NCBI GenBank assembly: GCA_963514005.1
Contig: OY740791.1
Span: 51,956,001 to 52,020,000 of the forward strand
Length of the DNA stretch: 64,000 nt
From: Raja brachyura
Taxonomy: Eukaryota
Reading direction: 5' to 3'
Made by a program: the position numbers and the translations under genes. Position 1 is the stretch's first letter; the number at the start of each line of letters is the position of its first letter. Under the pieces are notes generated by a model that did no database searches, had not been told where the DNA came from, and saw nothing but the letters and a program-made list of their open reading frames with translations. Positions 2,861 to 61,236 of the stretch are shown here, in pieces.

Positions 2861-2869
2861 GCGGAGCCG

Positions 2870-19990: not shown

Positions 19991-19994
19991 GCTA

Positions 19995-37366: not shown

Positions 37367-37474
37367 TTAATTCTGATCTGTCAGATCAGGGTTAGAATTC
37401 AGGGTCTGCATTGCAACAGCTTCTTTTGAATCATTTGTGGCATTTCCTGGAAATTCCTGTGAATTTCTGCTGCT
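37367..37474 (-). CDS. Gene 3 terminal exon: short cytoplasmic tail without Tyr
   Basis: gtttgatacag|AGC; SSRNSQEFPGNATNDSKEAVAMQTLNSNPDLTDQN*. Conserved in gene 2. Confidence 0.75.
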   Translation of the reverse strand, partial: SSRNSQEFPGNATNDSKEAVAMQTLNSNPDLTDQN

Positions 37475-38494
37475 CTGTATCAAACAAGAGAAACAAATAT
37501 GATTTTAAATAAAGATAAACAATAATAAACAATAGACTGGAAGTGATAGGTAAGAGGTTGCAGACCAAGTTGGAAACATTTTCATGGTCAGTTCATTCAA
37601 CTAAAAACACACAAATATCATCGTGAGTATTGAATGTGTAATTTTTTTAATTTGTGTTGATAAGGTGTTCTTTCAAATTTGATATCTTACAAAATTACAA
37701 GGTTAGATTGCGGAGAGGGATAGATATGTGAATGAACAAAGTCTTTACCTGGGTTGGGGTATCAAGAATCAGAGGCCATGGGTTCAAAATGAGAGGTTAA
37801 AGATTTAATAGGAATCTGACAGGCAATTTTTTTCTATCAGGTGGTGATATGTTTCTGGAATGAGCTGCCAGAGGAGATAGCTCAAGAAGATTCTGTAACA
37901 GCATTTAAAAAACATTGGACAAGTAAATGGATAGGAAAAGTTTAACGGTTCAAGTCCATATCTCTCTGAAAGTAACAACACAAGTAGATAAAATGGTAAA
38001 GAAGGCACAAAGTATGCTTGCCTTCATTGGCTGGGCCATTGAGTATAAGAGTTGGGAAGTCATGCTGCATGTTTAAAAAAACTGATTAGCCACATTAGGA
38101 GTTCTAGTAGCCCCATTAAAGGAAGGACATGAAGGCTTTAGAGAAGACGTAGAAGAGGTTTACCAGGATGCTGCCTGGAATAGAGCAAATAACATACATT
38201 TAACCTTTATGAAGTTTATCGAAGGGTTGTGGTAGAAATAGTTATGATAGTGGTGTTTGTGAGGTTTTTAGATAGGCACATTAATATGCAGGGAATGGAG
38301 AGATTTGGATCACGAGCAGGCAAAAGGAATACGTGTAATTTAACATCATGTGTTTCTGTGTTGCACTATTCTGTGCAAACACTAAAATACAGATTGTCAC
38401 CACTCTAATATGTTCTGCGAACATCCATTTTCTAAACGTCAGAGACACCTCGCCATTGGTTTCTGATATATTGAAAAGCTCATGAAATTCTCAC

Positions 38495-38598
38495 CCTGTT
38501 CATCCTCCACGAGCAGCAAATTAGTCCAAGAGCAACGGCCAGTTTAATCGACAAGTAGCCCAGAACTGTGATGATCCCAATGTCTGTAAGCGCTCTCA
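38495..38598 (-). CDS. Gene 3 transmembrane exon with central Lys
   Basis: Phase 1-0, 104 nt; VRALTDIGIITVLGYLSIKLAVALGLICCSWRMNR. Confidence 0.85.
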
Positions 38599-39337
38599 CT
38601 GTGAAGGATAAAGTTGAGATTTTCAGTTTCATACTCCATCTTGTTTCATAATTAAATACTCCTGTCTGTGATGTGACATCACAAACATTCTGCATTAGAC
38701 AGTGGGACACAGTTAGTAATGTTGTGTCCAGAGTGAGAAATATTTGTGCCAATCTAGGGTACCTTTTATTTTTTGTCCATAACATCTGAGTACTTCCCTT
38801 TGATACTTTCTGCTTCATTACTGTTGGAACATTGTGAATATTTTTTGGGTGAAAGAGATGTGTCAGAACGTACACAAAATTGGTTGATCTATTATCTAAA
38901 CTGATGTCAACCAGGTGTTCACTGTGGAGTCTGCACAAGAGGGACTGGATACAGATTCACAGCTGAGACTCTCCAGGCTCTGAATTCTCACTCTTGGCCG
39001 TATTTCCTGCGGAGCTATTAGAGCCAATGGAGTGATACAGCGTGGAAACAGGCCTTTCGGACCAACTTGCCTATTGAGGCCAACATGTCCATTGTGACAA
39101 GGTGCAATTTTGCTTCAATTTTATCCTCGTATTTGTTTGAAAGGTCTGTGTTTCTGTAACATGTATACACAAAATTCTTTTGTTTATTCACTGACATAAC
39201 ATTATGCCATCAATTGACAGGCTCCAGTGAAATTACACTTTGATCTGCAGCATTGGGCATTGATGGTTAATACAGGAGTTTTAAAATCAGAAATAACTTT
39301 ATTTAGGATTATCCAGTGAAAATAGCATAATTGTTAA

Positions 39338-40309
39338 TGCTGGTTTAAATTGAAGGTTGACACAAAATGCTGGAGTAACTCAGCGGGACAGGCAGCATCT
39401 CTGGTGAGAAGGAATGGGTGACATTTTGGGTTGAGAGAAGGGGAATGGGTGGGATAAAGGTAGAATGTAGTCAGAGACAGTAAGACTGGTGGAAGAACTG
39501 GGAAGGGGGAGGGGATAGAGAGGAAAAACAAGGGCTATTTGAAGTTCGAGGAGTTAATGTTCATACCACTGGGGTGTAAGCTACCCAAGCAAAATATGAG
39601 GTGCTGTTCCTCCAATTTGTGCTGGGCCTCACTACCAATGGAGGAGGCCCAGGACAGATAGGTCAGATTGGGAATGGGAGAGGGAGTTAAAGTGCTGAGC
39701 AACCGGGAGATCAGGTAGGTTAAGATGGACTGAGCAGAGGTGTTCAGAGAAATGATCGCCGAGTCTGCGCTTGGTCTCACCAATGTAAAGAAGTTGACAC
39801 CTGAAGCAGAGGATACAGTAGATTAGGTTGGAGGAAGTGCAAGTGAACCTCTGCCACACCTGCAATGACTGGATGCAGTCAATGACTGGATGCAGACTGG
39901 ATGCATCCTTGGATGCAGTCAAGGGGGAGGTAAAGGGGAAGGTAAATGAGTTGCATCTCCAGCGGTTGCATGGGAACATACCTGTGGAGGGGGTGGTTTG
40001 GGTGGAAAGGGACGAGTTAACCAGTGAGTTGTGGTGTAAACGTTCTCTGTAAGCGGAAAGCAGAAAGGGGTGGAGATGGGAAGATGTGGCCAGTAGTGGG
40101 GTCCCGTTGGAGGATTATATGCTGAATGCTACGGCTGATGGGTTGGTTTGCGAGCAGAGGGGGACTCTGCCCTTGTTACAAATGGGGAGAAAGGGAGCAA
40201 GACAAGAGCTGTGGGATATCGAATAAACTCCAGTGGGAGCCTTATCAATAATGGGGGAGGGGAACCACCATTTCCTAAAGAATGAGGACATGTTCGATAC
40301 CCTGGTCTG
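39338..40309 (-). mobile_element. Penelope-like element fragment (GIY-YIG region + tail)
   Basis: FTCTSSNLIYCILCFRCQLLYIGETKRRLGDHFSEH. Absent from the gene 2 intron near 28110. Confidence 0.8.
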
Positions 40310-40690
40310 CTACTCCTGTAGTAACTGAAGGCTGCTTTTGGTCCTTGTGAAATCTGCAGTTCGAATTTTGTTTGGAAATGTCCGTAATATAAATTATTTA
40401 CTATAGTCAAGGTACAACTATGGTACCGGATGTGAGATTAGGCAGATGTGAAGCCTATTGAAAAAATAATCACTGAAATCATCAAACCTGGAATTGTGTG
40501 CAGTGGAAAAGTTCAGATTCACATGTAGAGATCTCACCCAAGAGAACAATAAACATAAATTTAATCACCTTTTAAAGTGAATGATTGTGTATAAGAACCC
40601 TTTAAAAATAGTTAATTCAGCAATTATTTTTCATTGTTAAATTGACATGTAACATACAGTATGCATGTAGTTTATTGTTTGGCACTGATT

Positions 40691-43600
40691 TCAGTGTGAT
40701 GCTTGCAGTATGTGGGAGGTCAAGGACACTGGTGGTCCCTGTGGCTGCTACAAATGTGAGAAGTGCTTCCAGGTACAGCTCCTGAAGGACCGTGTTGGGG
40801 AACTGGAGAAGCAAGTGGATGACCTCAGGTTCGTCCGAGAAACTGAGTTGTTCCTCGACGAGTCCTACAATGAGAATGCTACACCTAAGGTACTGGAAGA
40901 GAGAAAGTGGGCGACGGTGAGAAAAGGAGGGAAACGTGGAAGGCAAAGGTCCCCGGGTGTTGTACCTCTTGTGAACAGTTTCACCCACTTAGAAGTTGTC
41001 GGGACAGAAGACGTTAAAACACTGTGCAGCAGACTGGCTTGTGAAGCAAAAAGGGCTGTTGAGCCAAAACCAAAGAGGCCAACGTCAGGCAACGCCATTG
41101 TAGTTGGAGACTCCATTGTGAGAGGTACGGACAGGGGTATCTGCGGTAACAAAAGGGATTCGAGGATGTTTTGCTGCCTTCCTGGTGCCAGGATCCAGGA
41201 TGTCACGGACAGAGTGCAGAAAATCCTCAAGGACGAAGGTGAACAGCCAGAAGTGGTAGTGCATGTTGGCACAAATGATGTCGGAAAGAAGGGGATCACT
41301 ATTCTGCACTGTGACTTTAGAGAGCTCGGAAAAATGCTGAAAAGCAGGACCTCCAGGGTTGGTATCTCCGGTTTGCTTCCAGTTCCTCGTGCTGGCGAGA
41401 GCAGGAACAGGGAGATACGGGACATGAATGTGTGGCTTACTAACTGGTGCAGGGGGCCGGATCTTAGATCACGGGGATTTGTTTTGGAGTAAGGGGGAAC
41501 TGTCCAAAAGGGACGGATTGCATCTTAACTGGTGGGGGACCGGCATTCTGGCAGGCAGGTTTGCCACTGCTACACGGATGGTTTTAAACTGAATAAGGGG
41601 GGTGGGGTGTCAAATGAGATAGTTGAGGATGGAGTTAAAGGGAAAGCGAGTAAAGGGAGGGTTAATTACCCCAGAATTAACGGGAAAGAAAGCTCACAAA
41701 GGGATAGGAGAATATGGCCAAGTGTAATAGGGATCGATGTGAAAGGTTAGATGCGTAAGGAATTAAAAGTATTGTATATGAATGCGCGAAGTATAAGAAG
41801 TAAAGTAGATGAGCTTGAGGCTCAGTTAGCGGTTGGTGGATGTGACATTGTCAAGTCAAGTCACGTATATTTATATAGCAATTTAAAAAACAACTCTCGT
41901 TGACCAAAGTGCTTGACATTTGTTATAAGAGTAGTATACACAAGCAGGCTACATACATATATACAAATACCCCTCACTCAGAGGACGTCAGGAAAGGCTT
42001 GGGAGAACAGATACGTTTCTAGACTAGACTTAAAGGGGTCGATGGAGGGGGCAGTTCTAATGGGGAGGGGGATGCTGTTCCACATTCTAGGAGCTGTGAC
42101 CACAAAGGCGTGGTCGCCCCTGAGCTTATGCCTAGACTGCGGGACATTCAGCAGCCCCAAGTCGGCCGATCTGAGGGACCTGGAGGTGGTGTAGTGGGTG
42201 AGAAGACTTTTAATGTAGGTGGGTGCAAGCCCATTGAGGGCTTTGTTGACAAAGAGGAGGGTCTTGAAATTCATTCGGAACCACACAGGGAGCCAGTGGA
42301 GAGAGGCCAGGATCAGGGTGATATGGTCCCTTTTACGGGTGCCCGTCAGGAGTCTCGCTGCGGCGTTTTGGACCAGTTGCAGGCTGGACAGGGTAGATTG
42401 GCTGATGCCAGTGTAAAGGGAATTGCAGTAATCTAGGCGGGAGGAGATAAATGTATTGTGGGGATTACTGAGACGTGGCTACAGGAGGATCGGGCCTGGG
42501 AACTTAATATTCAGGGTTATACATCCTATAGAAAGGACAGGCAGGTGGGCAGAGGAGGGGGTGTAGCTCTGCTGGTGAGGGATGGAATTCAGTCCCTTGC
42601 AAGGGAAGACATACGGACTGATGAGGTAGAGTCACTGTGGATTGAGTTGAGGAATTGTACAGGCAAGAAGACACTAATTGGTGTTATTTACAGACCCCAA
42701 AATAGTAGCCTGGATGTAGGGTGTAAGTTGCAGCAGGAGTTAAAACTGGCATGTAACAAAGGTAATGCCACTGTGGTGATAGGGGATTTCAATATGCAGT
42801 TAGTCTGGGAAAATCAGGTTGGTTCAGGACCCCAAGAAAGGGAGTTTGTAGAATGCCTCCGAGATGGATTCTTAGAGCAGCTTGTAATGGAGCAGACCAG
42901 AGAAAAGGCAATTCTGGATTTAGTGTTGTCCAATGAACCAGATATGACAAGAGAACTCAAGGCAAAGGATCCGCTTAGAGGCAGTGATCTCAATATGATT
43001 AGTTTTAATCTGCAATTTGAGAAGGAGAAAGTTAAATCAGAAGTGGCAGTGATACAGTTGAACAAAGGGGACTATGAAGGCATGAGGGAGGAGCTGGCCA
43101 AAGTAGACTGGAAAGGGATCATAGCAGAAATGACGGTGGAACAGCAATGGCAGGAATTTCTGGGCATAATCTGGAAGACGCAGGATAATTTCATTCCAAA
43201 AAGGAAGAAAGATTCTAAGGGGATTAGGAGGCAACCGTGGCTGACAAGAGAGGTTAGTGATAGAATAAAGCTAAAAGAAAAGATGTATAACACAGCAAAG
43301 AGTAGCCGGAAGCCAGAAGATTGGGAAACTTTCATAGGACATCAGAAGGAAACAAAACGGGCTGAAAAGATGAAGTATGAATGGAAGCTGGCCAGGAATA
43401 TAAAGAAGGACAGTAAAAGCTTCTTTAGATATGTTAAGTGAAAAAGAGTACCCAAAGTCAAATGTGGGTCCCATGAAGGCAGACACGGGTGAAATAATTA
43501 TGGGCAACAAGGAAATGGCAGAAGAGTTGAATAGGTACTTCGGATCTGTCTTCACTAAGGAGGACACAAACAATCTCCCAGATGTACTGGAGGACAGAAG

Positions 43601-45269
43601 ATCTAAGGGGGTAGAGGAACTGAAATAAATTTTCATTAGGCGAGAAATAATATTGGGTAGGCTAATGGGACTGAAGGATGTTAAATCCCCTGGGCCTGAT
43701 GGTCTGCATCCCAGGGTCCTCAGGGAGGTGGCTCTAGAAATAGTGGATGCATTGGTGATTATTTTCCACTGTTCAATAGATTCAGGATCAGTTCCTGTGG
43801 ATTGGAGAATAGCTAATGTTATCCCACTTTTCAAGATAGGAGCGAGAGAGAAAACAGGGAATTACAGACCAGTTAGCCTGAGTTCGGTGGTGGGAAAGAT
43901 GCTGGAGTCAATTATTAAAGAGGTAATAATGGAGCATTTGGATAGCAGTAAAAGGATTAGTCCAAGTCAACATGGATTTATGAAAGGGAAATCACGCTTG
44001 ACTAATCTTCTGGAATTTTTTGAGGATGTGAATAGTAAAATGGATGAAGGGGTGCCAGCGGATGTAGTGTATCTAGACTTTCAGAAAGCCTTGATAAGGT
44101 CCCGCACGGGAGACTGGTGGCTAAAATTAGAGCTCATGGTATTTGGGGTAGGGTGTTGACGTGAATAGAAAATTGGTTGGCAGACTGGAAGCAAAGAGTA
44201 GGAGTGAAGGGCCCTTTTTAGAATGGCAGGCAGTGGCGAGGGGAGTGCAGCAAGGCTCGGTGTTGGGGCCGCAACTGTTTACCATAAATATTAATGATTT
44301 GGAAGAGGGAATTAGGAGCAACACTAGCAAGTTTGTGGTTGACACAAAACTGGGTGACAGTGTGAACTGTGAAGAGGATGTTTGGAGGTTGCAGGGTGAC
44401 CTGGACAGGTTGAGTGAGTGGGCAGATGCATGGCAGATGCAGTATAATATAGATAAATGCGAGGTTATCCACTTTTGCGGCAAAAACAAGGGGGCAGATT
44501 ATTATCTCAAAGGGGTTAGGTTAGGTAAGGGGGAGGTACAGCGAGACCTGAGGGTCCTTGTGCACCGGTCACTGAAAGTTGGCGTGCAGGTACAGCTGGC
44601 AGTGAAGAAAGCTAATGGAATGTTGCCCTTCATAACAAGAGGATTTCAGTACAGGAGTAAAGAGGTTTTTCTGCAGTTGTATAGGGCTCTGGTAAGAGCT
44701 CATCTGGAGTATTGTGTACAGATTTGGTCTCCTAATTTGAGGAAGGACATCCTTGTGATTGAGGCAGTGTGGCGTAGGTTCACAAGATTGATCCCTGGAA
44801 TGGTGGACCTGTCATATGAGGAAAGAGTGAAAAGACTAGGCTTGTATTCACTGGAGTTTAGAAGGATGAGGGGGAATCTTATAGAAACATATAAAATTAT
44901 AAAAGGACTGGACAAGCTAGATGCAGGAAAAATTTTCCCAATTTTGGGTGAGTCCAGAACCAGGGGGCTGCAGTCTTAGAATAAAGGGGAGGTCATTTAA
45001 GACTGAAGTGAGAAAAATCTTTTTTACCCAGAGAGTTGTGAATTAATGAAATTCCCTGCCACTGAGGGCAGCGGAGGCCAAATCACTGGATGGATTTAAG
45101 AGAGAGTTGGATAGAGCTTTACGGGCTAATGGAATCAAGGGATATGAGGAGAAGGCAGGCATGGGTTATTGATAGCGGACGATGAGCCATGATCACAATG
45201 AATGGTGGTGCTGGCTCGAAGGGCGGAATGGCCATCTCCTGCACCTATTTTCTATGTTTCTATGTTTCT
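40691..45269 (+). mobile_element. Near full-length CR1 LINE (ORF1 zinc finger + SGNH esterase; ORF2 APE + RT), frameshifted
   Basis: ORF1 CxxC, VVGDSIVR, HVGTND. ORF2 ITETWL, GDFN, SPGPDG, NYRPVSL, QHGF, YLDF. (TTTCTATG)n tail. Absent in gene 2. Confidence 0.92.
41852..42454 (-). mobile_element. L2-like LINE 3' fragment nested in the CR1
   Basis: FKTLLFVNKALNGLAPTYI..RSLRS..AFVVTAPRMWNSIP..FKSSLETYLF. (TTGAC)n tail, ATTGT on both flanks. Confidence 0.8.
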
Positions 45270-45708
45270 CTTTAAGATTTCTTCCATTTTAAAAGAGAAT
45301 TGATGTGCATCTATAAGATACATGTGTGATATTTTTTACACATTGTTGTAGCAGCCACTGCTGTCAGTTGAGTGTAGAAAACTTCATTAAAGGCTGTTGT
45401 TCAGCATCTCTATCTTTATTTCTTGCAAATAAAAAAGAGACCATAGACGATTTGAATGATGAGGGGGTGAATTCTGGTAAAAAGATAAATCTGTGGGGAG
45501 GATTTTCCATGGGGGGTCAATGCTGAGTCATTGGACGTGAGGCGATTATGCAAAAAGAGAGAAGAATTGAGCAGAACATGGTGTGATGTAATGTGTAGGA
45601 AAGAACTGCAGATGCTGGTTTAAATCAAAGATAGAAACAAAATATGGAGTAACTCAGTGGGACAGGCAGCAACTCTGGAGATGATGTAACACAGGCTGAG
45701 GAACTTAC

Positions 45709-45978
45709 CGTTCACCTTAAGATAGATTGAATTGCTCAGCTTGAGGCTGTTTCGATGAAACAATCCACATGTCCATTTCCTTCTCACTGTCTCAGCTTTT
45801 GGAATAATCAGCTGCAAAGACCACACTTTCTCCCTTGACTCCTTTAAAAATTTGTCTCCCACCATTTTGTCATCACTGTTGATCCAAGTGAGTCTCATTG
45901 ATTCAGCAACACCAGACACAGAGCAGGTCAGGGTAACGCTGTCTCCCTCAGTCACTGCATCAGATGGTTCAGATGTAA
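45709..45978 (-). CDS. Gene 3 exon D8, C2-type (WxC)
   Basis: 270 nt, phase 1-1, open. EGDSVTLTC..LTW..RKWTCGLF. Confidence 0.9.
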
Positions 45979-46772
45979 CTGTGGAAACAAGAACATCATT
46001 GAGATTTTGAACAGCAGCCAGAATTTCTACTCTATTGATTTCTTTATCAATCCCCTGATATCCCTACCACTGACCTAAAGGACAATTCATATTGTTTAGA
46101 AACTCTGTTTTGTTGTTTACTACAGTGAGCAGCAAAAGACACGACACAAATGTTGAGGGGTGATCTCCAGTAAAAAGATCAATCTGTGGGAAGGGTTTTC
46201 CATGGAGGATCAATGCTGAGTCCTAGAAGGTGAATGAAAACACTTAATAATGTAATTGGTTACATTTATATTGTGCAACTTGAGTTTCCACAATCAATGA
46301 TACCAACTCAAAAACACTGCACAATAAGCAGCTGCTGCCCACAGCACTGCCTCAGTCCACTGTGCTGGAGCCAAACCCTTCCCCACACTGACACATTCCA
46401 ATGGCAGGATGCCACCCAGAGTCTCATGTGAATGACACATGATACAGATGATCCTGAATATACCCTCATAAGATCTTCTTTGGGGTTTATTTATTTCTAC
46501 GATGGGCCCATTTCCAGCGGGTGAATCAACTTCACATTATTGCCCTTAAATATGAAAAGGAAAATACTTTAATACCATTTGCTGGCTGATGCACTGTTTG
46601 GTGATTAATTTTGTGCTGAGTAAAATGCAAATAAATTTCTGGAATTCTGGAGGGAAATCCATTATTTAAAAGAAGGGAATATTAGGAGTAATTTGCACAG
46701 AAATTCAATTTGCATTCAAAGTGGGAACACTAATCAAACAAATCAAAAACACTGGCACATTCAGTCTTCTAC

Positions 46773-47111
46773 CTGTAACTCTGATTAGTTCAATGTTCAC
46801 ATATTTATTTGATCCCGTGGAACATGTGTAAACTCCGGCATCTGCAAACTGCACGGGGACAATCCTCACATGGAAATTCTTGCCATATACATTTCCCTCT
46901 ATGGTTTCCAGTCGATTCTCAAAGTAGCTCCTGTCTACATGTATCGGCTCAGACCCGAGAGAAGAAGCTATTTCCTTAGTTTGATTCTGGAAATGTTGTG
47001 ATCTCCAAGTCCATTTGGTTTCACTGAGCTCAGGAGAAGCTTCACAAATCAGGTCGAGTTCACTGTGATCTGTGACTGAGCGATAAACTGTGTACGTCTT
47101 GTTATGTAAAT
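46773..47111 (-). CDS. Gene 3 exon D7, V-type
   Basis: 339 nt, phase 1-1, open (translated by hand; not in the ORF track). ELDLICE..KWTW..ADAGVYTC. Confidence 0.9.
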
Positions 47112-47903: not shown

Positions 47904-48167
47904 CCTGATCCACTTCAACATTGATGTCTCCAGTGAGAACAATGGAGCCATTTTCCTGCACTTCCCATGTGTACAGATTGGGATTTCCTGCTCCAGCATG
48001 TTGGACCATCAGATAGATGATGTTATTCAGACGGATCTGATCAGCGTTGTTCCTCCTGTTCTGCTGAGATGGTTTCCAGTGAAGACTGAAGGTATCAGGG
48101 AGTCTGGAGATGGTACAGCTGAGGGTGATGTCACTGCCCATTACAGGCCTCGGTGAGTCTGCCTCAA
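47904..48167 (-). CDS. Gene 3 exon D6, C2-type (F-strand Cys replaced by Trp)
   Basis: 264 nt, open. GSDITLSC..LHW..LYTWEV. Confidence 0.88.
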
Positions 48168-49373: not shown

Positions 49374-49712
49374 CTTTGATCCCAAATAGTTCCCACTGTC
49401 TCAGGATTTTCCCACCGGGCTGTGTCTGATTCCAGGTGAACAGTCCTGCAACTTGAAAGGTGGGCTTCCTGATCCTCAGATTAAGGGTACCCCAGTCCGC
49501 ACGCATCCTCTGGGAAAGGCCTGGTATTTGATTGTACTCATCACTCCATTGTACGGCCCACCGCTGATCTTCTCTTTGAAAAGTGGCCAATCGCTTTGTG
49601 GTTTGTTGCCCTGAGTGTGGCCTCCATTCCAAGTTAATGGTGCCATTTCCAGGACTGTCTGGTCCTTTCAGTACAAAATAGCCTTCCTGGTGGAAAAAGT
49701 AAATAGTAGTCC
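49374..49712 (-). CDS. Gene 3 exon D5, cysteine-free V-like domain
   Basis: ttctggcag| acceptor, G|GTATGT donor, 339 nt, open. YFVLKGPDSP..LEWRPHSG..LNLRIRKP..VAGLFTW. Confidence 0.88.
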
Positions 49713-52428: not shown

Positions 52429-53903
52429 TTATGAATGTGTGAATTCAGATTATTGAACATATGGTTTGGGGGAAGAGTTTGAGAGGAGCTCAGACAAATG
52501 ATGGTGTGGGGAGATTGTATGGACATTTCATAGTCTCCCAGATTATTCAAACCTTTAATGAGAAAAGTGGAGGGAGGGCTTGGTAACCCAACATTGACCA
52601 ATGAAGAAGGGGCAGAGGAGGGCAGGTTTATTTGCAAACAACCAGCAGCCATGACCAATCATCGATGGCAACAGGAGACAGAAGGTGATGACAGAGAGTT
52701 GTTTTTGCACCTGGATGCCTGTTACTGACGGTGACTAATGGTGTCCCACAATGATTGGTCCTGGGACCTTGTTGTGTCTAATCTACACAAATTTCTTAGC
52801 AGTGGATTTGGGAGGCAAGATTAGTGAAGTTGTTGATAGTGTGGACAGTGGTCTTATTCTGCAGAGAGATGTCAATGTGTTGGTGGAATATGCTGGGAAA
52901 TGAAAGATGGATCTTAATCCAGTCATTTGTGAGGTGATGTGCCTCCCCTTTATTCTAAGGCTGTGGCCCCTGGTTTTGGACATATACCATGAATTATAAG
53001 GTCTGACAAAGTATTGAGGAACAGAGGGACATTGGAGTACATACATTGATCCTTGAACGTGAAAACACAAGTACATAATGTGGTTGGAAAGGCATATGGG
53101 ATAGTGTGTTCATCAGTCAGGACATTGATCACAGAAGTAGGGAAGTTATGCGGCAGATGTGTAAACTTTGGTCAGGCCTCAGCTGGAGTACTGTATGCAG
53201 TCTGGTCACCAAATGATGGGAAGAATGTGATAGCACTGGAGAAGGTATAGAGAAGATGGACAGGATGCTACCTGGGTTGGAGCTAATGAGTTCTGAGAAG
53301 AGATTAAAGAAGCAACATTCATTCTCCCTGGAGTTGAACTCCCTGGAGTTGAGGGGACATTATTGACATGTATAACTGGTCAACATGGGTGAAATGGGTA
53401 AGTGGCCCATTCCAATGCTGCATGATTCTATGTTTGCACAGTTTGTAACACCACAGGTGGCAGGACTGCTTATGTAAACAGCGTTCCCCATCCAGGTATC
53501 CTGAACACTCCAGGGTCCAGCTGTGCTCAGGGTGAGGAGGACCTGTGAGATGGTCTCTCTGTGTTCAGTATCAGTCAGTATGGGATGATGGACAGTGGGC
53601 AGTGAATCTGGCAGCGGAATTGGTCCACGGTTCAATGGAAAGGTCCTGTTTTGCTGACAGGACCCAATGCTTATCCCAGCTCTGTCACTTTCCCAAGAGC
53701 ATCAGTGACACATAGAAAGGTGAAGTTTCAATCTTCACCCAGGGGCACGGTTATCCCACGGTCCATATTCCCAAGCACTGCACCACAGCAGAGCCTTCCA
53801 CACGGGCCGTGAAGGAAGAGTGAATACTGGCAAATAGTGCAATAAGTGACATCAAAATGTGATCCTGATTCTAAGTATGAAGAGCAAACCCTGAGTCACT
53901 TAC

Positions 53904-54164
53904 CAGTGGGTTCCTGATAGTACGGGACTAAAAGCCGGGGCAGGTCTTGATGAAACAAACCACATCTCCAGTTCCCTCTGCCCCTCTCAGCTTTCTGAAT
54001 AACCAGACTCAGGGATTTCTCTTCCACAGTCAGTGTCTTTTCTCCAACACTTTTGCCATCACCATTGATCCAAACCAGTCTCATTGACTCGGTACCGTGA
54101 GACACAGAGCAGGTCAGGGTAATGTTGTCTCCCTCAGTCACTGCATCAGACGGCTCAGCTGTGA
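53904..54164 (-). CDS. Gene 3 exon D4, C2-type (WxC)
   Basis: 261 nt, phase 1-1, open; paralog of 213-473. Confidence 0.9.
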
Positions 54165-54242
54165 CTGTGGAAACAAGCAGGTTGTTTACACTTTTAACAA
54201 TTAATTCATCAGTAAAAACAGTGGCCGCATTCTGTCTCCTAC

Positions 54243-54587
54243 CTTTCACTGTGATTAGATCAATGGTGAGAAATAGATATGTTCCCGTTGAACATTTGTA
54301 AACTCCGGCATCTTGAAACAAAACTGGGACAATTCTCACACTAAAATCCTCGCCATTTAAGTGTTTCACTGAGGTCATCAGTCGATTCCTGAAAGTGGCC
54401 TTGCTAACATTGATGGGCTGAGAGAGTGTTGCTGATGCTATTACTTCCTCATGGTCTTTTAGGCCACTAAATGTCCAGGTCCACACTTCAGAATCCTCCT
54501 CGGAACCAGGAAGCCGATAGCAAACCAGCTGGACTTCACTGTGATCTGTGCTGGAGCGGTAAAGTGTGTGATGTTTGCCGTACATGT
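54243..54587 (-). CDS. Gene 3 exon D3, V-type
   Basis: 345 nt, open. EVQLVC..WTW..DAGVYKC. Confidence 0.9.
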
Positions 54588-55579
54588 CTACAGCAGAGAA
54601 ACAAAAGAATAGGACTCCTTTCAGCATCACAGTTACTGAGGCACAGGTGTAATCAGGTAAAAGTTCCCACACAGATTTTTATTAAAATTATTTGTGTTTT
54701 GTTCATCTGATAAGTTTCAAAATGTGACTTCTTACATGGATTCCACACCATAAACACGTCAGGTTTTTCTAAAAATAACACATATGTCCGGCACAATACA
54801 CATACCAGGCCCCCATCTCCCAGACTGTCACTGATCTCATCATCTCTGGCGATCACCCTGCCACAGCCTCCAACCTAATCATCCACCAGCCCATTTCTAT
54901 CTCCTTCTGAAACTCCACAAACAGGGCAGCCCTGGCAGACCCGTTATTTCTGCCTACCCCTTCCCCACATAAATCATTTCTTCCTCTTGTCCAGTCCCGG
55001 AATGGTGAACGTCTTCTGACCATCTCACTCACCCTCATACAGAACCAGAATGCTGCAAACATCAGCTCTACCCCACTCTGTCACATTCCTCTGTCCACCA
55101 GCTGCCTCCTTCCTCTCTTTGCATCCAATCCCACCCTTCCCTTCATTCCCATAATTCCCTTCACCCCTCTCTCATTCACACCCATTGATTCCCACCCTTC
55201 CTTCTTCCTGGGTCCTGCTCCCAGCTGAATGCTGATCTGAAGCTGGAGTCTGGAGCAGCTGGAATCACTTCAATCAGAAGAAAAGTCCTGACCCAAAACA
55301 TCACCTATTAATGTTCTCCAGTAATGCCCCACTGAGTTACTCTTACTAAACACATAGAATTCATTATTTCGGTATTGTGTATCTGTCAAACAGAGATAAA
55401 CAGGCAGCTGCTCCACAGGGAGACTTTCTGGAAGCTTCTCCATGAACACTGAAGCATTTTGTACAAGAGAGCTTTTGGCCACGAACTACAATTCTTCACG
55501 GGGTGCACACATGATGTTATAATAAGCACCAATGGTACAAGTGTATGTTCAATATCTAATATGAGGTATTGACACTTAC

Positions 55580-55849
55580 CTTCAGAGAGACTAAAATTGC
55601 CGTTACTTATCTGAATGATTTTTCCGTTTTCCTGCACTTCACAGACATACAGCTTCCCATCCTCCACTGTAACATGTCGAACCATCAGGTAGACCGTGTT
55701 CTTCAGGCGGATCTGATCAGTGTTGCTCATGTTCAGCTGGGATGAGTCCATTGGTCTCCACTGAAGACTGACTGCATCTGAGAGTCTGGAGATGGTGCAG
55801 CTGATTGTGACGTCACTGCCCAGCAGAGGGCGCTGTGGACTTGCCTCAA
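55580..55849 (-). CDS. Gene 3 exon D2, C2-type
   Basis: 270 nt, open, donor G|GTAAGT. Confidence 0.9.
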
Positions 55850-56509
55850 CTGTGAAAAACAGATCAATGAGATTCAGAGTGAGTAGTGGTGTGTACAGTC
55901 CAATGACTGGGCTCAATCTCACCTCAGCTGAAAACCTAGACATAAAGACTGAAGGACAACTTCTTTCCCAGTGGTTTCCGACTCTTGAACCAATCATCAC
56001 CTTCACTCACACTTCCTGGTGGCGCTGTCACGTGTTCTTGCAGTTATTGCACTTTAGTTTTATTTTGCGTTCATTCAGACAGCTCTGCAAACTCTGCACC
56101 GTTCTGCTGTGTTGCATTTATTGTGTTTATAGTTTTATCCGTCATTAACTTTTACTCAATGAGTTTCATGTGAACAAAGAATGTAATTGCATCCTGGTGT
56201 TTATGACAATAAACTCATCTGAACCAGTATTGTTCTACACAGTTACGTTGTTGCTGTTTGACACTTTTTTAAATGTTTTTAAATCAAAATAATTAATTCA
56301 AATATTAAAATAATATTTACAAGACAATAAAACACAACACAACCCACCACCATAATACAAGACAAACAATAAACTATTATACAACTATCTTACAATCCTT
56401 GTCAAGGATGTATTCAACGCCCCGTGGTGCCCAGCGGTCCTGGAAATCCCCCAGAGTGCCCATAGTGAGCGCATAGTTCCTCTCCAAGACCACCCAGGCA
56501 CGGACATAA

Positions 56510-57295
56510 CTAGCCACATTTCCCCATCTCCACTCCTTTCTGCCTTCCGCAGAGACTGTTCCTTCTGCAACTCCCTGGTTATCTCATTCCTTCCCATCCT
56601 TCCCACCCCCTCCCCAGATACCGTCCCCCACAACCGCAGAAGATGCAACACCTGTCACTATAACCTCTGTCCAGGGATCCCAACAGTCATTTCAGGTGAG
56701 CAGAGGTTTTCTTGCACCTCCTCCAACCACATCCACTGTATTGTTGTTCAAGATGTGGAGTCTTTTACATCGGCGATACCAAAGGCAGACTGGGCGATCA
56801 TTTCACGGAGCACCATCACTTAGACCACGTGAACCAACCTGATCTCCCAGTTGCTGGACACTTCAATTGTGTTACCCATTCCTACACAGACCTTTCTGTC
56901 CTCGTTCTCCTCCATTGTCAGTGAGGCTAAATGCAAATTGGAGAAACAACATCTCATATTTCACTTGGGCAGCTTACAGCCCAGTGATATGAATATTGGT
57001 TTCTCTCACTTCAGGTAGCCCTGCATTCCCTCGCTCTCCATCCCTCCCCCATCCTATTCACACTAGCTTCTCATTTTCACCCTACAAAGAACTTACAATG
57101 GCCTGTTTCCTTTATCATCGTCACTTTTTTGTATATCTTTCATTCATTGTTCTTTATCTCTCCACGTCGCCGTCTATATTTCTCGTTTCCATTATTCCTA
57201 ACTGGTCTGAAGAAGAAGGATCACAACCCGAAACGCCACCCGTTCCTTCTCTCCAGAGATGCTGCCTGTCCTGTTGAGTTACTCCAGACACTTTT
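56510..57295 (+). mobile_element. Penelope-like fragment (deleted paralog of 2870-4930)
   Basis: CSRCGVFYIGDTKGRLGDHFTEH. Lacks the MITE and about 900 bp present in copy 1. Confidence 0.75.
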
Positions 57296-57806
57296 TGTGT
57301 CCATTGGCAGTGCTGTGGCTTGCTGGTCACTGTTTAAATGAGGACATTTCTTTTTGTAGCAAGGGAAGATTGTAATCTTAGTTGCATTGTATTGCATTTA
57401 TTTTTGTAAAGTTTATAATAATAATAAACTATACAATATATTATTTCTATTGAAGTCATTATATGGCTACTAATGATATTTTAATTATTTCTATTGTTTT
57501 CATTATAAGGCTACGAATGATATAATAATTATTGTATCAGTTATTTCTGAGTTAGGCTTCTCCCATTGATTTTGGTTCCTACTGGCAACTGTTGTATTGT
57601 GGAATTAATTTGTGGAGCGTATAAAAGTCCCCTGGTGTACATGTTGAGTTACCTGCTACTGCGATTGTCTGTGATCAAAGAAACTAACTGTAGCCCCATT
57701 ATTACCCACAGCCCAGAGTGACTGGAATATTATCTTCATAACATAGGGTTGCATGTGACATTATTTACAGAGAAACACATTATTGATCCGTGTCTCGCCC
57801 ACTCAC

Positions 57807-58145
57807 CTTTGATCCCAAATATTTCATATTGTTTCAGGATTTGCTTCATCGGCTGTGTTTTAGTCAAAGTGAAGAATCCCGCCCATTTAAATGCGTTGTT
57901 TTTTATTATCAGATTACAAGTAGTGGCATCCACATCCACCTCCTGGTTCTTGTCTCTATCTCTCCAACCATCGCCCCACTGGATGGTCCAATGTTTGTCC
58001 ACTCTGCTGCCAGTTAACACTGTCTGGATTCCCTGCCCTGAGTGTGGTTCCCATTCCCAAACAACAATGCCACTCCCAGGATTGTCCGGTCCTTTTAACA
58101 TAATGTTGCCTCCATTATCCAAGAAATGAATCAGATTTCTCTTTT
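57807..58145 (-). CDS. Gene 3 exon D1, V-like domain lacking canonical cysteines
   Basis: 339 nt, open; differs from gene 1 D1 by 2 aa. Confidence 0.88.
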
Positions 58146-58597
58146 CTGTTGGAAAGAGGATCAATGAAGGAATTTAGAACACATTTCCTCCATCCATGTC
58201 AGCAATTTTTAATTTTGAATTCTATTTATTTCCAGAAAGTTTTGATCTTCCTCAGAAAATACATGAAGTGCTGGAGTAATCAGCGGATCAGGCAGCATCT
58301 CTGGGGAACACGGATAGGTTACGTTTTGTGTCAGAAACCTTCATCAGACGCCTGTGTACCCGAAGAAGATTCCTTACCTGAAATGTCACTTATCCCTATT
58401 CACCAGAGGTGCTGTCCGACCTGCTGAGTTACAACAGCACTTTGTGTTTTTCATTCCCTGTGAAGCATTGACTGAGAAATAGATTGTCGGAGGGTGGATA
58501 AGCGAGTTCGGTATTCCGACTACGCATGCCCAGTTCATAGGTCACGAGCTATAAAGTCGGAGGTGCTGCATTGTGTGCAGACTTGCGTTTTGTCCTT

Positions 58598-59190
58598 GGT
58601 CAGGGTCAGGGTCAGGGTTGGGGGTGCTCTTGTTGCTGCAGGGCCGTTCCCTCGACGGTGTCCCGTCCAGGTCTGGAGGTGTGCAGGGTGGCCTTGAGCT
58701 GGCGGGGCAGCCCTGGACTTTCAGCCGCTGGCTCCAGCTCGACTCTGCCGGGTTGGTCAGCAGCCCTCCACCTCCACCCCACTCCCCTTAGTCTGACACC
58801 GAGATCCTGTTGAAGATGGGCAGCCGCCGGCTGGATGAAGTGGCAGCGGGTACCATAGGGGCAGAGCTCAACTTGGCCAGGCCGTGAGCGAACTGGTACT
58901 TGTCGCCGTAGTGGCCCATCAGGGAGCGGGTTCCTGTGGAGTTGGAGCGGGGTTGGGCTGGAGTTGGCGCTGGCTGTGATTCTGTGGGATCGTGCCAGTG
59001 GTGGGCCTGGGGACGTCTCCAGCCGCCCCCCGAGCGGGGATGGGACATTCGAGAGGGGTGGGAACCGGGGACGGTGCAGTGGTGGTTATGCAGCGATTGC
59101 GATTCGTCTGCATTTGTGGTTGCGGGGATCCTGGCTGCAAACGAGACGAGGTTCTCCGGATGAGCACTGGTCCAGTCTCCACCCTCCCCC
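58598..59190 (-). pseudogene. ZFP36/TIS11-like processed fragment (paralog of 6235-6760)
   Basis: HYGDKYQFAHGLAKL and LCPYGTRCHFIQ. Confidence 0.7.
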
Positions 59191-59604
59191 CCCCAACCCC
59201 CCGATGTACAAAGCTGCAATGTTTTTCTCATTTTATTGGTTCATGCCTCCGTGAGTGAGCGATGTCGCGAAGATAAATGACACGCATTTTTTTGTCTTGA
59301 GGGTGGGGGGAATGAAATTAAATGTATGACAGTGTATGGGAAATCTGGCATCTTTGGACTGATTTAAATAGTTCCAGCTACAGCAAGAGCTACAGTACAG
59401 CTTTTCTTCCCATATTTTTTAACCCCTTCTCTGCTAAAAAAAATCTTCAAAGCTTTGAATTTCCATGACATAAAACCTTCCAGCTTCATACATTGGAACT
59501 TTGAATCAGCCATGACAAATAGAAGCTAAAAAAAAGACAAAAAATCGGACCAAAAGTATACTCACTGTTTCTATAGTGCTGAGATCTATTCACTGTTATA
59601 GCTT

Positions 59605-60822
59605 ACCATATAACCATATAACAATTACAGCACGGAAACAGGCCCTCTCGGCCCTTCCCGTCCATGCTGAACATTTATTTTCCCCTAGTCCCATCTCCCT
59701 GCACTCAGACCATACCTCTCCATTCCCTTCTCGTCCATATACCTATCCACTTTACTTTTAAATATTAAAATCGATCCTGCCTCCACCACTTCTGCTGGAT
59801 GCTCATTCCACACAACCACCACTCTCTGAGTAAAGAAGTTCCCCCTCATGTTACCCCTAAACTTCTGTCCCTTAATTCTCATGTCATGCCCTCTTGTTTG
59901 AATCTTCCCTACCCTCAATGGGAAAAGCTTATCCACGTCAACTCTGTCTATCCCTTTCATCATTTTAAAGACCTCAATCAAGTCCCCCCTTAACCTTCTG
60001 CGCTCCAAAGAATAAAGACCTAACTTGTTCAACCTTTCTCTGTAACTTAGTTGCTGGAACCCAGGCAACATTCTAGTAAATCTCCTCTGTACTCTCTCTA
60101 TTTTGTTGACATCCTTCCTATAATTAGGCAACCAAAATTGTACACCATACTCCAGAATTGGTCTCACCAATGCCTTGTACAATTTTAACATTACTTCCCT
60201 ACTCCTATATTCAATGCTCTGATTTATAAAGGCCAGCACACTAAAAGCTTTCTTTACCACCCACATGCGATTCCACCTTCAGGGAACTATGCACAGTTAT
60301 TCCTAGATCCCTCTGTTCCACAGCATTCCTCAATTCCCTACCATTTACCTTATACGTCCTATTTTGATTTGTCCTGCCAGGATGTAGCACCTCACACTTA
60401 TCAGCATTAAACTCCATCTGCCATCTTTCAGCCCACTCTTCCAAATGGCCCAAATCTCTCTGTAGACTTTGAAAATCTACTTCATTATCCAAAACACCAC
60501 CTATCTTAGTATCATCTGCATACTTATCCAATTTTCCACCCCATCATCCAGATCATTGATGTACATGACAAGCAACAGAGGACCCAACACAGATCACTGA
60601 GACACCCCACTGGTCACCGGCTTCCAACCTGACAAACAGCCATCCACCATTACTCTCTGGCATCTCCCATTCAGCCACTGTTGAATCCATCTTGCTACTC
60701 CACCATTAATACCCAAAGATTGAACCTTCTTAACCAACCTTCCATGGGGAACCTTGTCAAAGGCCTTACTGAAATCCATATAGCACCATCCACTGCTTTA
60801 CCCTCATCAATTTCCCTAGTAA
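59605..60822 (-). mobile_element. CR1 LINE, second subfamily, 5'-truncated
   Basis: MDFSKAFDKVPHGRL, KYADDTKIGG, LYKALVRPILEYGVQFW. Absent from gene 1 near 7275. Confidence 0.9.
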
Positions 60823-61148
60823 CCTTGCGTTTTTCGGAATACCGAACTCACTTATTGTCTGAGGCAGTATGAGGGTACTGTGCATAAGCGTGAAGTGAAG
60901 ACATTGCAGGTGATTCTTGGGCAGCGACCTCTGCAACAAGCTCACAGGTGGGAATCTCTCCCTGAGGGGAGGCAGCTGATGGGAGGGGTGCAGAAATGGA
61001 GCTCCAACAAGAATGGCATGGATTTGTGAGGCAGCAGCACATTCAGGTATGTGGAGAGGAAAGTGAGATTGACAATGGGGTGCGGGTTTACAAGGACAAT
61101 GATAAAGTAAAGCAAGGTGATTGTGACCCGTGAAGAGAAAGCACTTAC

Positions 61149-61236
61149 TCTGTGTGGAAACAGATCGAAGCAGGAAACCAAAGACACCGAACATCAAACC
61201 AGCTGTCAAACTGCTGCAGAGAAACTTCGGCCTCAT
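61149..61236 (-). CDS. Gene 3 leader (signal peptide) exon
   Basis: ATG at 61236, MRPKFLCSSLTAGLMFGVFGFLLRSVSTQ, donor A|GTAAGT. Confidence 0.85.

What the first reader, a model, noticed from the sequence alone, without database searches (positions are those of the whole stretch)
37367..61236. Eight-Ig 'double CD4-like' activating receptor, invisible in the ORF track
Seen: 11 open exons with canonical, phase-compatible splice sites join into 2727 nt (908 aa): leader, (V*-C2-V-C2)x2, TM with Lys, 35-aa terminal exon. I found no leader or TM exon between D4 (53904) and D5 (49712), and in gene 2 the D4 remnant and D5 are only about 670 bp apart, so one 8-domain gene is the simplest model. Established: V-C2-V-C2 with an F-strand WxC in C2 domains typifies CD4, LAG-3 and fish G6F-like. 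This tail has no CxC Lck motif, no ITAM, no ITIM and no Tyr. Inference: an expanded, possibly uncharacterised chondrichthyan leukocyte receptor family that doubled the CD4-like module.
Basis: partly seen in the sequence, partly recalled or inferred. Interest (0 to 1): 0.9.

Follow-up and report, generated by a model that had tools for sequence, protein, structure and literature searches.

The report
Eight-Ig activating receptor gene, CD4/LAG-3-like modules
This is an intact skate-type gene for a surface receptor with eight antibody-like domains and an "activating" membrane anchor; it belongs to a large fish receptor family that databases list only as uncharacterized, and its domain pairs are predicted to fold most like those of CD4 and LAG-3.

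Summary
On the minus strand, 11 open exons (61236 to 37367) have AG/GT at every splice boundary and compatible phases. They add up to 2727 nt, which is 908 codons plus a stop. All 11 exons lie in the same order along a little-skate RefSeq model with the same layout, XP_055498694.1 of 899 aa.

I counted 34 stored database proteins with the same eight-domain order, from 18 elasmobranch species and Callorhinchus. I found no leader or TM exon in the D4-D5 intron.

The gene belongs to a paired family. Some relatives have a TM lysine and a short tail; others have ITIM tails. Kin also occur in bony fishes.

Predicted structures of two database relatives match CD4 and LAG-3 best. It is not CD4 or LAG-3 itself: it is multi-copy, lacks their tail motifs, and has WxC only in D4 and D8.

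Neighbouring gene 2 is a pseudogene.

The scan had already followed up this family on other DNA of the same genome: s1-880666, s1-880913, s1-881413 and s1-881304. I found no paper that names the family.

The parts
61149..61236 (-). Exon 1: ATG and signal peptide (88 nt, ends in phase 1, donor GTAAGT)
   Evidence: tblastn with family leaders gives E 2.8e-16. 76-83% identical to the leaders of P0296 and P0229.
57807..58145 (-). Exon 2: D1, a V-like Ig domain without the Cys pair
   Evidence: No Pfam hit. 87% identical to P0229 D1. The equivalent domain in P0056 folds as an Ig domain at pLDDT about 90. It sits in the tree clade of leader-proximal domains: 54 of 57 rows are 'first'.
55580..55849 (-). 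Exon 3: D2, a C2/I-type Ig domain (Cys...Trp...YVC)
   Evidence: Pfam Ig_3 2.6e-06, ig 1.8e-05. Boundaries.
54243..54587 (-). Exon 4: D3, a V-set domain with the canonical disulfide and DAGVYKC
   Evidence: Pfam V-set 3.2e-06. Boundaries. dN/dS is 2.65 against the gene 3 copy, with the changes in loop regions.
53904..54164 (-). Exon 5: D4, a C2-type domain with WRC in the F strand; donor G|GTAAGT
   Evidence: Pfam Ig_3 1.2e-07.. 94% identical to P0229 D4.
49374..49712 (-). Exon 6: D5, a V-like domain without the Cys pair (an internal copy of the D1 type)
   Evidence: 84-86% identical to the internal D5 of P0211, P0210 and P0229. It sits in a clade in which 49 of 50 rows follow a D4-type domain.
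47904..48167 (-). Exon 7: D6, a C2-type domain with YTW in place of YxC
   Evidence: Pfam Ig_3 0.0019. Boundaries. 84-86% identical to skate relatives.
46773..47111 (-). Exon 8: D7, a V-set domain with the canonical disulfide
   Evidence: Pfam V-set 1.6e-06. Boundaries. 88% identical to P0236/P0296.
45709..45978 (-). Exon 9: D8, a C2-type domain with WTC in the F strand
   Evidence: Pfam Ig_3 2e-06. Boundaries. 82% identical to P0296 D8.
38495..38598 (-). Exon 10: stalk, TM helix with a central Lys, and RMNR stop-transfer (ends in phase 0)
   Evidence: tblastn with family TM segments gives E 4.9e-22. 82% identical to P0296.
37367..37474 (-). Exon 11: 35-aa Tyr-free tail and stop
   Evidence: Homologous to the tails of P0056, P0250, P0014 and P0296 (...AVAMQTLNS.PDL...).

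Best explanation
Gene 1 is one intact 11-exon gene on the minus strand. It encodes a type I membrane protein with a signal peptide, eight Ig domains and a transmembrane helix with a central lysine. The domains form two tandem four-domain modules, each ordered V-like without disulfide, C2, V, then C2 with WxC. The cytoplasmic tail is short, has no tyrosine and carries no signalling motif.

It is the activating-type member of a large, tandemly clustered family of paired activating and inhibitory Ig-superfamily receptors. The family is found in cartilaginous fishes and in several ray-finned fishes.

Inferred mechanism:
- The ectodomain binds a still unknown ligand, most likely through the fast-changing V domains D3 and D7.
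- The TM lysine pairs in the membrane with an acidic residue of an ITAM-bearing adaptor of the DAP12 or FcR-gamma kind, which delivers an activating signal.
- ITIM-tailed relatives with like ectodomains deliver the opposite signal.
- Because every Ig exon is in phase 1-1, shorter isoforms made by exon skipping are likely alongside the eight-Ig form.

Shown: gene structure, intactness, family membership and co-linearity with other species' models. Shown only on predicted models of relatives: the CD4/LAG-3-like fold. Inferred: expression, adaptor coupling, ligand and cell type.
For: - Exon table with canonical sites and phases; total 2727 nt.
- All 11 exons map in order along XP_055498694.1 of Leucoraja erinacea, 899 aa, at 50-88% identity. 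The first seven Ig exons are 77-94% identical to XP_055498697.1.
- The predicted D4>D5 join ...YYQEPTG|TTIYFFHQEGYFVLKGP matches ...YYQETSGTTIYLFHQEGNYVLKGP in that model, and the joins in 59 stored proteins with 65 junctions.
- 34 of 216 stored family proteins have the full eight-domain order.
- No leader or TM exon in the D4-D5 intron, with working positive controls.
- D5-type domains are internal in 49 of 50 rows of their clade.
- Paired signalling: 22 stored proteins have the ...GYL.[VI]KL... TM and 80 have ITIM tails such as IHYGSI and VIYAQI. The eight-Ig TM-Lys layout also occurs in Pristis XP_051869512.1 and Leucoraja XP_055498694.1.
- The tail exon is conserved as far as a sawshark.
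- Three copies lie in this window.
Against: - No RNA evidence from this genome.
- The supporting models from other species are automatic predictions, and I could not see what supports them.
- Reading through the D4 donor meets a stop after two codons. Some database models end just there, for example P0041, P0027 and P0002. A soluble four-Ig product is therefore possible.
- Only 1 of the 34 eight-Ig proteins counted is TM-Lys. A second was fetched afterwards.
- dN/dS between paralogues is near 1 overall (0.90 and 0.77), so constraint is not demonstrated by that test.
- No adaptor gene was looked for.
Confidence: 0.78

Rival explanations
1. There are two products rather than one. The D1-D4 part gives a secreted four-Ig protein, by read-through or polyadenylation after D4. 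The D5-D8-TM part is either used from an unseen start or not used at all.
For: The D4 donor read-through stops after GK. Database models end at the same point: P0041, P0027 and P0002. Four-Ig membrane forms are common in the family, for example P0056 at 509 aa.
Against: No leader-like exon lies upstream of D5. D5-clade domains are internal in 49 of 50 rows. D5-D8, TM and tail are all open with intact splice sites. A co-linear 899-aa model exists in a related skate. A soluble isoform could exist alongside the eight-Ig form without replacing it.
Confidence: 0.1
2. Gene 1 is a recently silenced or never expressed copy whose reading frame is still open by chance of youth. This happens in fast-turnover receptor clusters.
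For: The neighbouring gene 2 is decayed: two in-frame stops in D5, no D2 and a fused D3/D4 remnant. dN/dS between copies is near 1. No RNA holder was found.
Against: All 11 exons, 908 codons and 20 splice dinucleotides are intact. D4 shows dN/dS of 0.24 and D1 0.49 against gene 3.
Confidence: 0.1
3. The family belongs to an already named group, so the CD4/LAG-3 likeness is only general Ig likeness. Candidates are the skate modular domain immune-type receptors (MDIR), fish CEACAM or SLAM/CD2 relatives, or G6F-like.
For: - MDIR are described as skate activating/inhibitory multigene receptors (passages of PMC3031540; further details of MDIR are my recall).
- CEACAM members are reported in cartilaginous fishes (passages of PMC5112662 and PMC13278318).
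- Two database names say 'CEACAM-like'.
- The profile hits CEA at 1.4e-12 and NCAM1 at 5.2e-13, as strong as LAG-3 at 2.6e-12.
- D1 matches the SLAM-family V domains NTB-A, 2B4 and CD48 at Z 11.8-13.8.
Against: - No MDIR, CEACAM1 or G6F name appears among 51+62+34 listed hits, apart from two automatic '-like' labels.
- MDIR are said to resemble CD300, TREM and pIgR, whereas this family gives only generic Ig Pfam hits.
- D3 and D7 are disulfide-bonded V domains in mid-chain, unlike the N-A-B order of CEACAM.
- There is no ITAM tail, as G6f-like has (abstract of PMC3528668).
- In an unbiased structure search, the two-domain D3-D4 unit matches CD4 and LAG-3 first.
Confidence: 0.1

Closest known systems
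RefSeq models XP_055498694.1 (Leucoraja erinacea LOC129701495 isoform X1, 899 aa) and XP_051869512.1 (Pristis pectinata LOC127569165, 875 aa), both 'uncharacterized protein'
   Same: Same layout: leader, eight Ig domains in the same type order, TM with ...YL.IKL/VKL... lysine, and a short tail.
   Different: They are predictions in other species, 50-88% identical per exon. No function, expression data or name is attached to them.
CD4 and LAG-3
   Same: - Each four-domain module runs V-C2-V-C2.
- WxC lies in the F strand of D4 and D8. PMC10768021 (passages) calls this motif very unusual and typical of CD4/LAG-3 D2 and D4.
- The family profile aligns D3end-D4 to both V-C2 halves of LAG-3, WxC included.
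- Foldseek ranks LAG-3 and CD4 first for a four-Ig relative, at 4.7e-18 to 8.8e-17.
- An unbiased search with a D3-D4 relative gives rat CD4 D3-D4 at Z 13.8, rmsd 2.8 A, 170 of 177 residues. CD4 D1-D2 follows at Z 11.9 and LAG-3 D3-D4 at Z 11.7.
   Different: - Multi-copy clustered family with paired TM-Lys and ITIM tails.
- No Cx(C/H) or (F/Y)xxL(D/E) tail motif.
- D2 and D6 have YVC and YTW, not WxC.
- The first V lacks the disulfide and the second has it.
- The module is doubled, and more than doubled in some models.
- Sequence-level scores are no better than for NCAM or CEA.
- Pfam's CD4-type C2-set is hit in only 2 of 36 members.
Paired activating/inhibitory Ig receptor families (KIR, LILR, SIRP, CEACAM1/3, fish NITR; named from general knowledge)
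   Same: Near-identical ectodomains are joined either to a charged TM with a short tail or to ITIM tails. The genes lie in tandem clusters with pseudogenes. The V-domain loops change fast.
   Different: The domain types and order differ, and the ectodomains are much longer (8 Ig, with up to about 15 domain hits in one catshark model). No sequence membership in any of these families was found.
Skate MDIR (modular domain immune-type receptors)
   Same: A skate multigene family with activating and inhibitory forms and modular Ig domains (passages of PMC3031540; the rest is recalled).
   Different: MDIR are described as CD300-, TREM- and pIgR-like V domains. I could not fetch MDIR sequences, so identity was not tested.

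Membership tests
CD4/LAG-3 family | Ectodomain of four Ig domains in V-C2-V-C2 order | tested here: met
   Pfam types per exon. The AF2 model of the relative P0056 aligns over all four domains to CD4, Z 17.8 with 316 residues aligned but rmsd 12.4 A. Here the unit occurs twice.
CD4/LAG-3 family | WxC motif in strand F of both C2 domains (D2 and D4), as stated in PMC10768021 | tested here: not met
   D4 has WRC and D8 has WTC, but D2 has YVC and D6 has YTW (one search prints the exon peptides). So the motif is present in only one C2 domain of each module.
CD4/LAG-3 family | Tail motif: Cx(C/H) for CD4, or (F/Y)xxL(D/E) for LAG-3 (PMC10768021) | tested here: not met
   The window's tail is SSRNSQEFPGNATNDSKEAVAMQTLNSNPDLTDQN. 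Relatives have ITIM tails instead.
CD4/LAG-3 family | As a rule one gene of each per haploid genome (PMC10768021) | tested here: not met
   There are three copies in this window. Dozens of models per species appear in the databases.
CD4/LAG-3 family | Rigid two-domain V-C2 rod as in solved CD4 and LAG-3 structures | tested here: met
   Tested on predicted models of relatives only. 1cid_A gives Z 13.8, rmsd 2.8 A and 170 of 177 residues, ranking first of 48,161 chains. With the four-Ig model the same hit (Z 13.6) is tied with single V domains.
CD4/LAG-3 family | Binds MHC class II | not testable with these tools
   Needs binding assays.
Paired activating/inhibitory IgSF receptor family (general kind) | Like ectodomains joined either to a charged TM with a short tail or to an ITIM tail | tested here: met
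   Among 216 stored family proteins, 22 are TM-Lys and 80 are ITIM. The window gene is TM-Lys.
Paired activating/inhibitory IgSF receptor family (general kind) | Tandem gene cluster with turnover | tested here: met
   The window holds genes 1, 2 (pseudogene) and 3. Earlier notes place more copies on both sides (not checked here).
Paired activating/inhibitory IgSF receptor family (general kind) | The TM charge pairs with an ITAM adaptor | not testable with these tools
   Inferred from the central Lys and the strong conservation of the TM sequence from sharks to skates.
CEACAM | N-terminal V-like domain without disulfide, followed only by C2-type A/B domains | tested here: not met
   D1 has no Cys pair, but D3 and D7 are disulfide-bonded V-set domains in mid-chain. 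The CEA and CEACAM1 profile hits (1.4e-12, 5.3e-08) are no better than NCAM1.
MDIR (clearnose skate) | Sequence identity with deposited MDIR1-5 | not tested
   No MDIR sequence could be fetched. No hit carried that name.
G6F-like | ITAM-bearing tail (abstract of PMC3528668) | tested here: not met
   The window's tail has no Tyr. The sequence was not compared with G6f-like.

The most novel reading that the evidence does not exclude
This unnamed family, present in chimaera, sharks, rays, bichir, sturgeon, eels and salmonids, is a true sister lineage of CD4 and LAG-3. The V-C2(WxC) co-receptor module would then come from, or be shared with, an ancient germline-encoded paired activating/inhibitory receptor system of early jawed vertebrates. 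Cartilaginous fishes expanded that system by doubling the module, in some models more than doubling it. Under this reading its members may sense MHC-like or other polymorphic ligands.
Probability: 0.25. Interest if true: 0.75.

Novelty: new variant of a known kind. Interest (0 to 1): 0.5.

Why it matters
Paired activating and inhibitory Ig receptors are well studied in mammals and teleosts, but little is described for cartilaginous fishes, the oldest jawed vertebrates with adaptive immunity.

This family is large and conserved from chimaera to salmonids. It is built from a CD4/LAG-3-like module and would bear on two open questions: where the CD4/LAG-3 module came from, and what innate receptor systems early jawed vertebrates used.

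This particular gene adds an intact activating eight-Ig member with a clean exon model. It also adds a nearby pseudogene and a paralogue that differs mainly in the V-domain loops.

The interest is tempered in four ways. Co-linear models already stand in RefSeq. The scan has already reported the family four times in this genome. A 2018 paper mentions 'several CD4/LAG3-like molecules' found in 2014, in supplements I could not see. Expression is unproven here.

Tried and rejected
The D4>D5 junction and expression in this genome therefore stay unchecked.
- ESM Atlas with the D1 exon gave no usable hit.
- Literature. I ran eight searches:
  - MDIR
  - 'obscurin-like' plus nurse shark (0 papers)
  - CD4/LAG-3/shark/WxC
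  - CEACAM/cartilaginous fish
  - elasmobranch/ITIM/multigene
  - catshark/CD4/LAG3
  - DAP12/cartilaginous fish
  - G6F-like

  None gave a paper naming this family.
- What I saw of each paper:
  - Passages only: PMC10768021, PMC3031540, PMC5112662, PMC13278318, PMC6238376, PMC10751288, PMC3964593.
  - PMC4536121: no passage matched (69).
  - PMC3528668: listing and start of abstract only.
  - Ohashi 2010 is not held.
- The supplements of PMC3964593 (Supplementary Note XI) may list these genes as 'CD4/LAG3-like'. Supplements are closed, so I cannot tell.
- The claim that fish G6F-like also has WxC and V-C2-V-C2 was not verified.
- Rejected: MDIR, CEACAM, SLAM or G6F membership as the better label (see rivals).
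- Rejected: reading the 780-nt open frame 53899-54678 as one exon. Relatives splice out the 78-nt in-frame intron, giving ...LITVKVTAEPSD....
- dN/dS between copies was too noisy to prove constraint.
The 908-aa product was never assembled, searched or folded. Every search, translation and count was done exon by exon, and structures were predicted only for database proteins (P0056 with A2, P0003 with A4).

Full report
WHAT IS THERE

The window holds 217 N in one run and otherwise ordinary vertebrate sequence. On the minus strand between 61236 and 37367 lie eight long open stretches with Ig hallmarks, a leader-like ATG exon, a hydrophobic exon and a short last exon.

I placed every boundary by reading the flanks and then checked them mechanically. 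There are 11 exons of 88, 339, 270, 345, 261, 339, 264, 339, 270, 104 and 108 nt, 2727 nt in all. All ten acceptors are AG behind a pyrimidine run and all ten donors are GT. The phase is 1 throughout and 0 between the TM and last exons, and there is no in-frame stop.

The introns measure 3003, 1957, 992, 78, 4191, 1206, 792, 794, 7110 and 1020 nt.

Pfam calls D2, D4 and D8 Ig_3/ig and D3 and D7 V-set. D6 is weakly Ig_3. D1, D5 and the TM exon are not hit.

Everything was done exon by exon.

ONE GENE OR TWO

Reads could not decide this. None of the 8 listed runs is on record as RNA. I left that stretch out of everything afterwards. The junction in this genome is therefore unchecked. The comparative evidence, however, points clearly one way.

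(i) Co-linear model. All 11 exons map in order, edge to edge, onto one little-skate RefSeq model, XP_055498694.1 of 899 aa:

- leader 4-32
- D1 35-138
- D2 140-227
- D3 230-341
- D4 342-427
- D5 433-543
- D6 544-634
- D7 636-747
- D8 747-837
- TM 839-872
- tail 873-899

Identity per exon is 50-88%. A second little-skate model, XP_055498697.1, is 77-94% identical over D1-D7. It carries the join ...YYQETSGTTIYLFHQEGNYVLKGP. The window predicts ...YYQEPTG|TTIYFFHQEGYFVLKGP.

(ii) Junctions in the stored set. Of 293 proteins stored at that point, 216 carry family-type domains. 59 of these show 65 direct D4-type>D1/D5-type joins, with a median gap of 5 residues. 34 have the full eight-domain order. 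By the names, those 34 come from 18 elasmobranch species and Callorhinchus.

(iii) Tree. In a tree of 135 D1/D5-type domains, the window's D5 lies in a clade (SH-aLRT 97) of 50 rows. 49 of them follow a D4-type domain. The single exception is a model that begins at residue 1 without a leader. The window's D1 lies in a clade of 57 rows (SH-aLRT 98), of which 54 are leader-proximal. The split between the first and second module is thus older than the shark-ray split, and D5-type domains are not seen behind a leader. The tree rests on only 115 columns and a quick search, so I use only these two starred clades.

(iv) Intron scan. 71 family leaders and 170 family TM segments found nothing above noise in the two pieces of the D4-D5 intron (best E 0.006-0.025). 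They found the true leaders at 2.8e-16 and 5.9e-18 and the true TM exon at 4.9e-22.

(v) Splice signals. The D4 donor (G|GTAAGT) is conserved in genes 1, 2 and 3, and a D5 acceptor (AG behind a pyrimidine run) is present in genes 1 and 2.

Against all this, reading through the D4 donor stops after two codons, and some database models end just there. A soluble four-Ig isoform may therefore exist beside the long form. Because all Ig exons are phase 1-1, exon-skipped isoforms are also expected. RefSeq lists isoforms that lack D3, D6 or D7.

THE FAMILY

The D3-D4 open frame found 51 proteins, all from cartilaginous fishes. In the 1.84-billion-protein library it found 359 proteins at E up to 0.001.

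A 974-aa manta model (eight Ig domains with an ITIM tail) found 62 relatives. Most are 850-1030 aa.

The family is paired. 22 stored proteins have the conserved ...GYL.[VI]KL... TM with a short tail, and 80 have a plain TM followed by tails with IHYGSI- and VIYAQI-type ITIMs. The window's gene is of the first kind. Its 35-aa tail has no Tyr and is homologous to tails in a sawshark and in skates.

Eight-Ig forms with TM-Lys are the minority. One of the 34 counted is of this kind (Pristis XP_051869512.1), plus the little-skate model fetched later.

Relatives at 25-36% identity occur in bichir, sturgeon, eels, tarpon, salmonids and a cyprinid. They keep the same four domain types and the same tail motifs.

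No source gives a real name. The labels are 'uncharacterized', 'hypothetical', 'CD276 antigen homolog', 'CEACAM-like', 'VCAM1-like' and 'obscurin-like'. The last includes a nurse-shark GenBank entry, AGQ17915.1, of 916 aa with eight Ig domains. No genome contig is recorded for it, and I could not establish whether it comes from a cDNA.

WHAT IT RESEMBLES

Sequence level. A profile of 20 four-Ig members hits many Ig proteins in the PDB: NCAM1 5.2e-13, CEA 1.4e-12, titin 1.8e-12, LAG-3 2.6e-12 to 1.4e-11, CEACAM1 5.3e-08 and CD4 about 1e-06. The LAG-3 match is not the strongest. It is notable, though, because the D3end-D4 part of the profile aligns to both V-C2 halves of LAG-3, across the domain boundary and including WxC.

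Pfam gives only generic Ig families. The CD4/CD2-type C2-set model is hit in 2 of 36 members.

Structure level.

- The AF2 model of the four-Ig activating sawshark protein P0056 has pLDDT 81.9 and pTM 0.74.
  - Foldseek matches it best to LAG-3 (4.7e-18, 1.1e-17) and CD4 (6.8e-17, 8.8e-17), ahead of engineered V-C-V-C antibody fusions, pIgR and Dscam.
  - VIA-align puts four-domain CD4 first at Z 17.8, with 316 residues aligned but rmsd 12.4 A.
- The model of a D3-D4-TM skate protein, P0003, has pLDDT 76.2.
  - I searched it without Foldseek against 48,161 representative chains.
  - Rat CD4 D3-D4 came first: Z 13.8, rmsd 2.8 A, 170 of 177 residues.
  - Next were CD4 D1-D2 (Z 11.9) and LAG-3 D3-D4 (Z 11.7), followed by single V domains at Z 11.6 and below.
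- With the whole four-Ig model, the same unbiased search puts single V domains first: MPZ 14.2, JAML 14.1, NITR11 13.8 and NTB-A 13.8. CD4 D3-D4 is tied at 13.6.

The likeness is therefore real but not overwhelming. D1 by itself looks like the disulfide-less V domains of the SLAM/CD2 group.

These are predicted models of relatives, not of the window's protein.

Motifs. PMC10768021 (passages) states that WxC in strand F of D2 and D4 is the hallmark of CD4 and LAG-3. It also states that sharks have CD4 and LAG-3 genes of their own, with Cx(C/H) and (F/Y)xxL(D/E) tails. The window's gene has WxC in D4 and D8 only, none of those tail motifs, and many paralogues. It works with a CD4/LAG-3-like module but is not CD4 or LAG-3. 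Whether the family is their sister lineage is open.

HOW IT MOST LIKELY WORKS

It is a type I receptor. The long ectodomain binds an unknown ligand. The central TM lysine recruits an ITAM adaptor. The ITIM-tailed relatives oppose it. All of this is inferred by analogy with paired receptor families.

One hint to the binding site comes from comparing gene 1 with gene 3. D1 is 99.1% identical in DNA and D4 is 97%. D3 has dN/dS of 2.65 over 115 codons, with the changes in the stretch after the B-strand Cys and just after YxC. This is a single pair and a small sample.

NEIGHBOURS

- Gene 3 (minus strand) has its leader at about 7715, D1, D2 and D3-D4 down to 208. It runs off the window.
- Gene 2 (plus strand, 18205-29065) has D1, no D2, a fused D3/D4 remnant, D5-D8 and a TM exon. 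Its D5 carries two in-frame stops, so it is a pseudogene. Its D4>D5 interval is about 666 nt and keeps both splice signals.

PRIOR WORK IN THIS SCAN

Four earlier follow-ups on other DNA of the same genome describe the same family with the same reading. I reached my reading before seeing them, and I tested the shared claims myself.

PRINT

I found no paper that names the family. PMC6238376 (passage) says that Venkatesh et al. 2014 identified 'several CD4/LAG3-like molecules' in cartilaginous fishes.

Noticed in passing
window 18205-29065 (+): Gene 2 is a decayed copy of the same eight-Ig layout. D1 is present, D2 was not found, and D3 and D4 are fused into one half-and-half remnant (22504-22887). 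D5 has two in-frame stops, while D6-D8 and the TM exon (28949-29050) are open. Its D4>D5 join would read ...EPRG|CGDSIYFF, like little-skate LOC129701495.
   Followed up: yes
window 208-7715 (-): Gene 3 is the first module of a third copy and runs off the left edge of the window. Against gene 1, D1 is 99.1% identical in DNA. D3 differs mainly in loop-like stretches (dN/dS 2.65), while D4 has dN/dS of 0.24. The pattern suggests homogenised D1 and diversifying D3.
   Followed up: partly
window 54165-54242 (-), and the same place in gene 3 (about 481-552): The D3-D4 intron is only 78 nt and is open in frame. D3, intron and D4 therefore form one 780-nt open frame, and retaining the intron would add 26 residues without a stop. 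A basking-shark model (P0009) reads into the homologous intron after D7 with a similar peptide (GRRQNVTAVFNDQ... against GRRQNAATVFTDE...), so the start of this intron is conserved between a skate and a shark.
   Followed up: partly
window 47904-48167 (-): D6 has Trp where the F-strand Cys should be (YTWEV). The same Trp is seen in most relatives I read, from manta, sawfish, skates, basking shark and numbfish. The gene 2 copy and one thorny-skate model have Cys. The second C2 domain of the family seems to do without the canonical disulfide.
   Followed up: partly
window 40710-44979 (+), inside the D8-TM intron: A LINE-type retroelement lies on the opposite strand. Its open frames hit Exo_endo_phos (1.9e-06) and RVT_1 (3.3e-07, 2.5e-06), plus an OSK-like stretch. 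It explains the 7.1-kb intron. Reverse-transcriptase-like frames also lie at 59685-60779 (-) in the leader-D1 intron, though the one frame I scanned (59688-60266) had no Pfam hit at 0.001.
   Followed up: partly
window, inside the D4-D5 intron of gene 1: A roughly 1-kb GC-rich low-complexity stretch reads as Ser/Pro/Leu or Gly/Glu/Arg repeats in the open-frame lists. I did not study it.
   Followed up: no
stored protein P0052 (Scyliorhinus canicula XP_038652085.1, 1710 aa) and P0205, P0208, P0209: Some shark and ray models chain three or four modules (about 11-15 Ig domains) in front of one TM and an ITIM tail. Eel models reach 2139 aa. Whether these are real giant receptors or fused predictions is open.
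   Followed up: no
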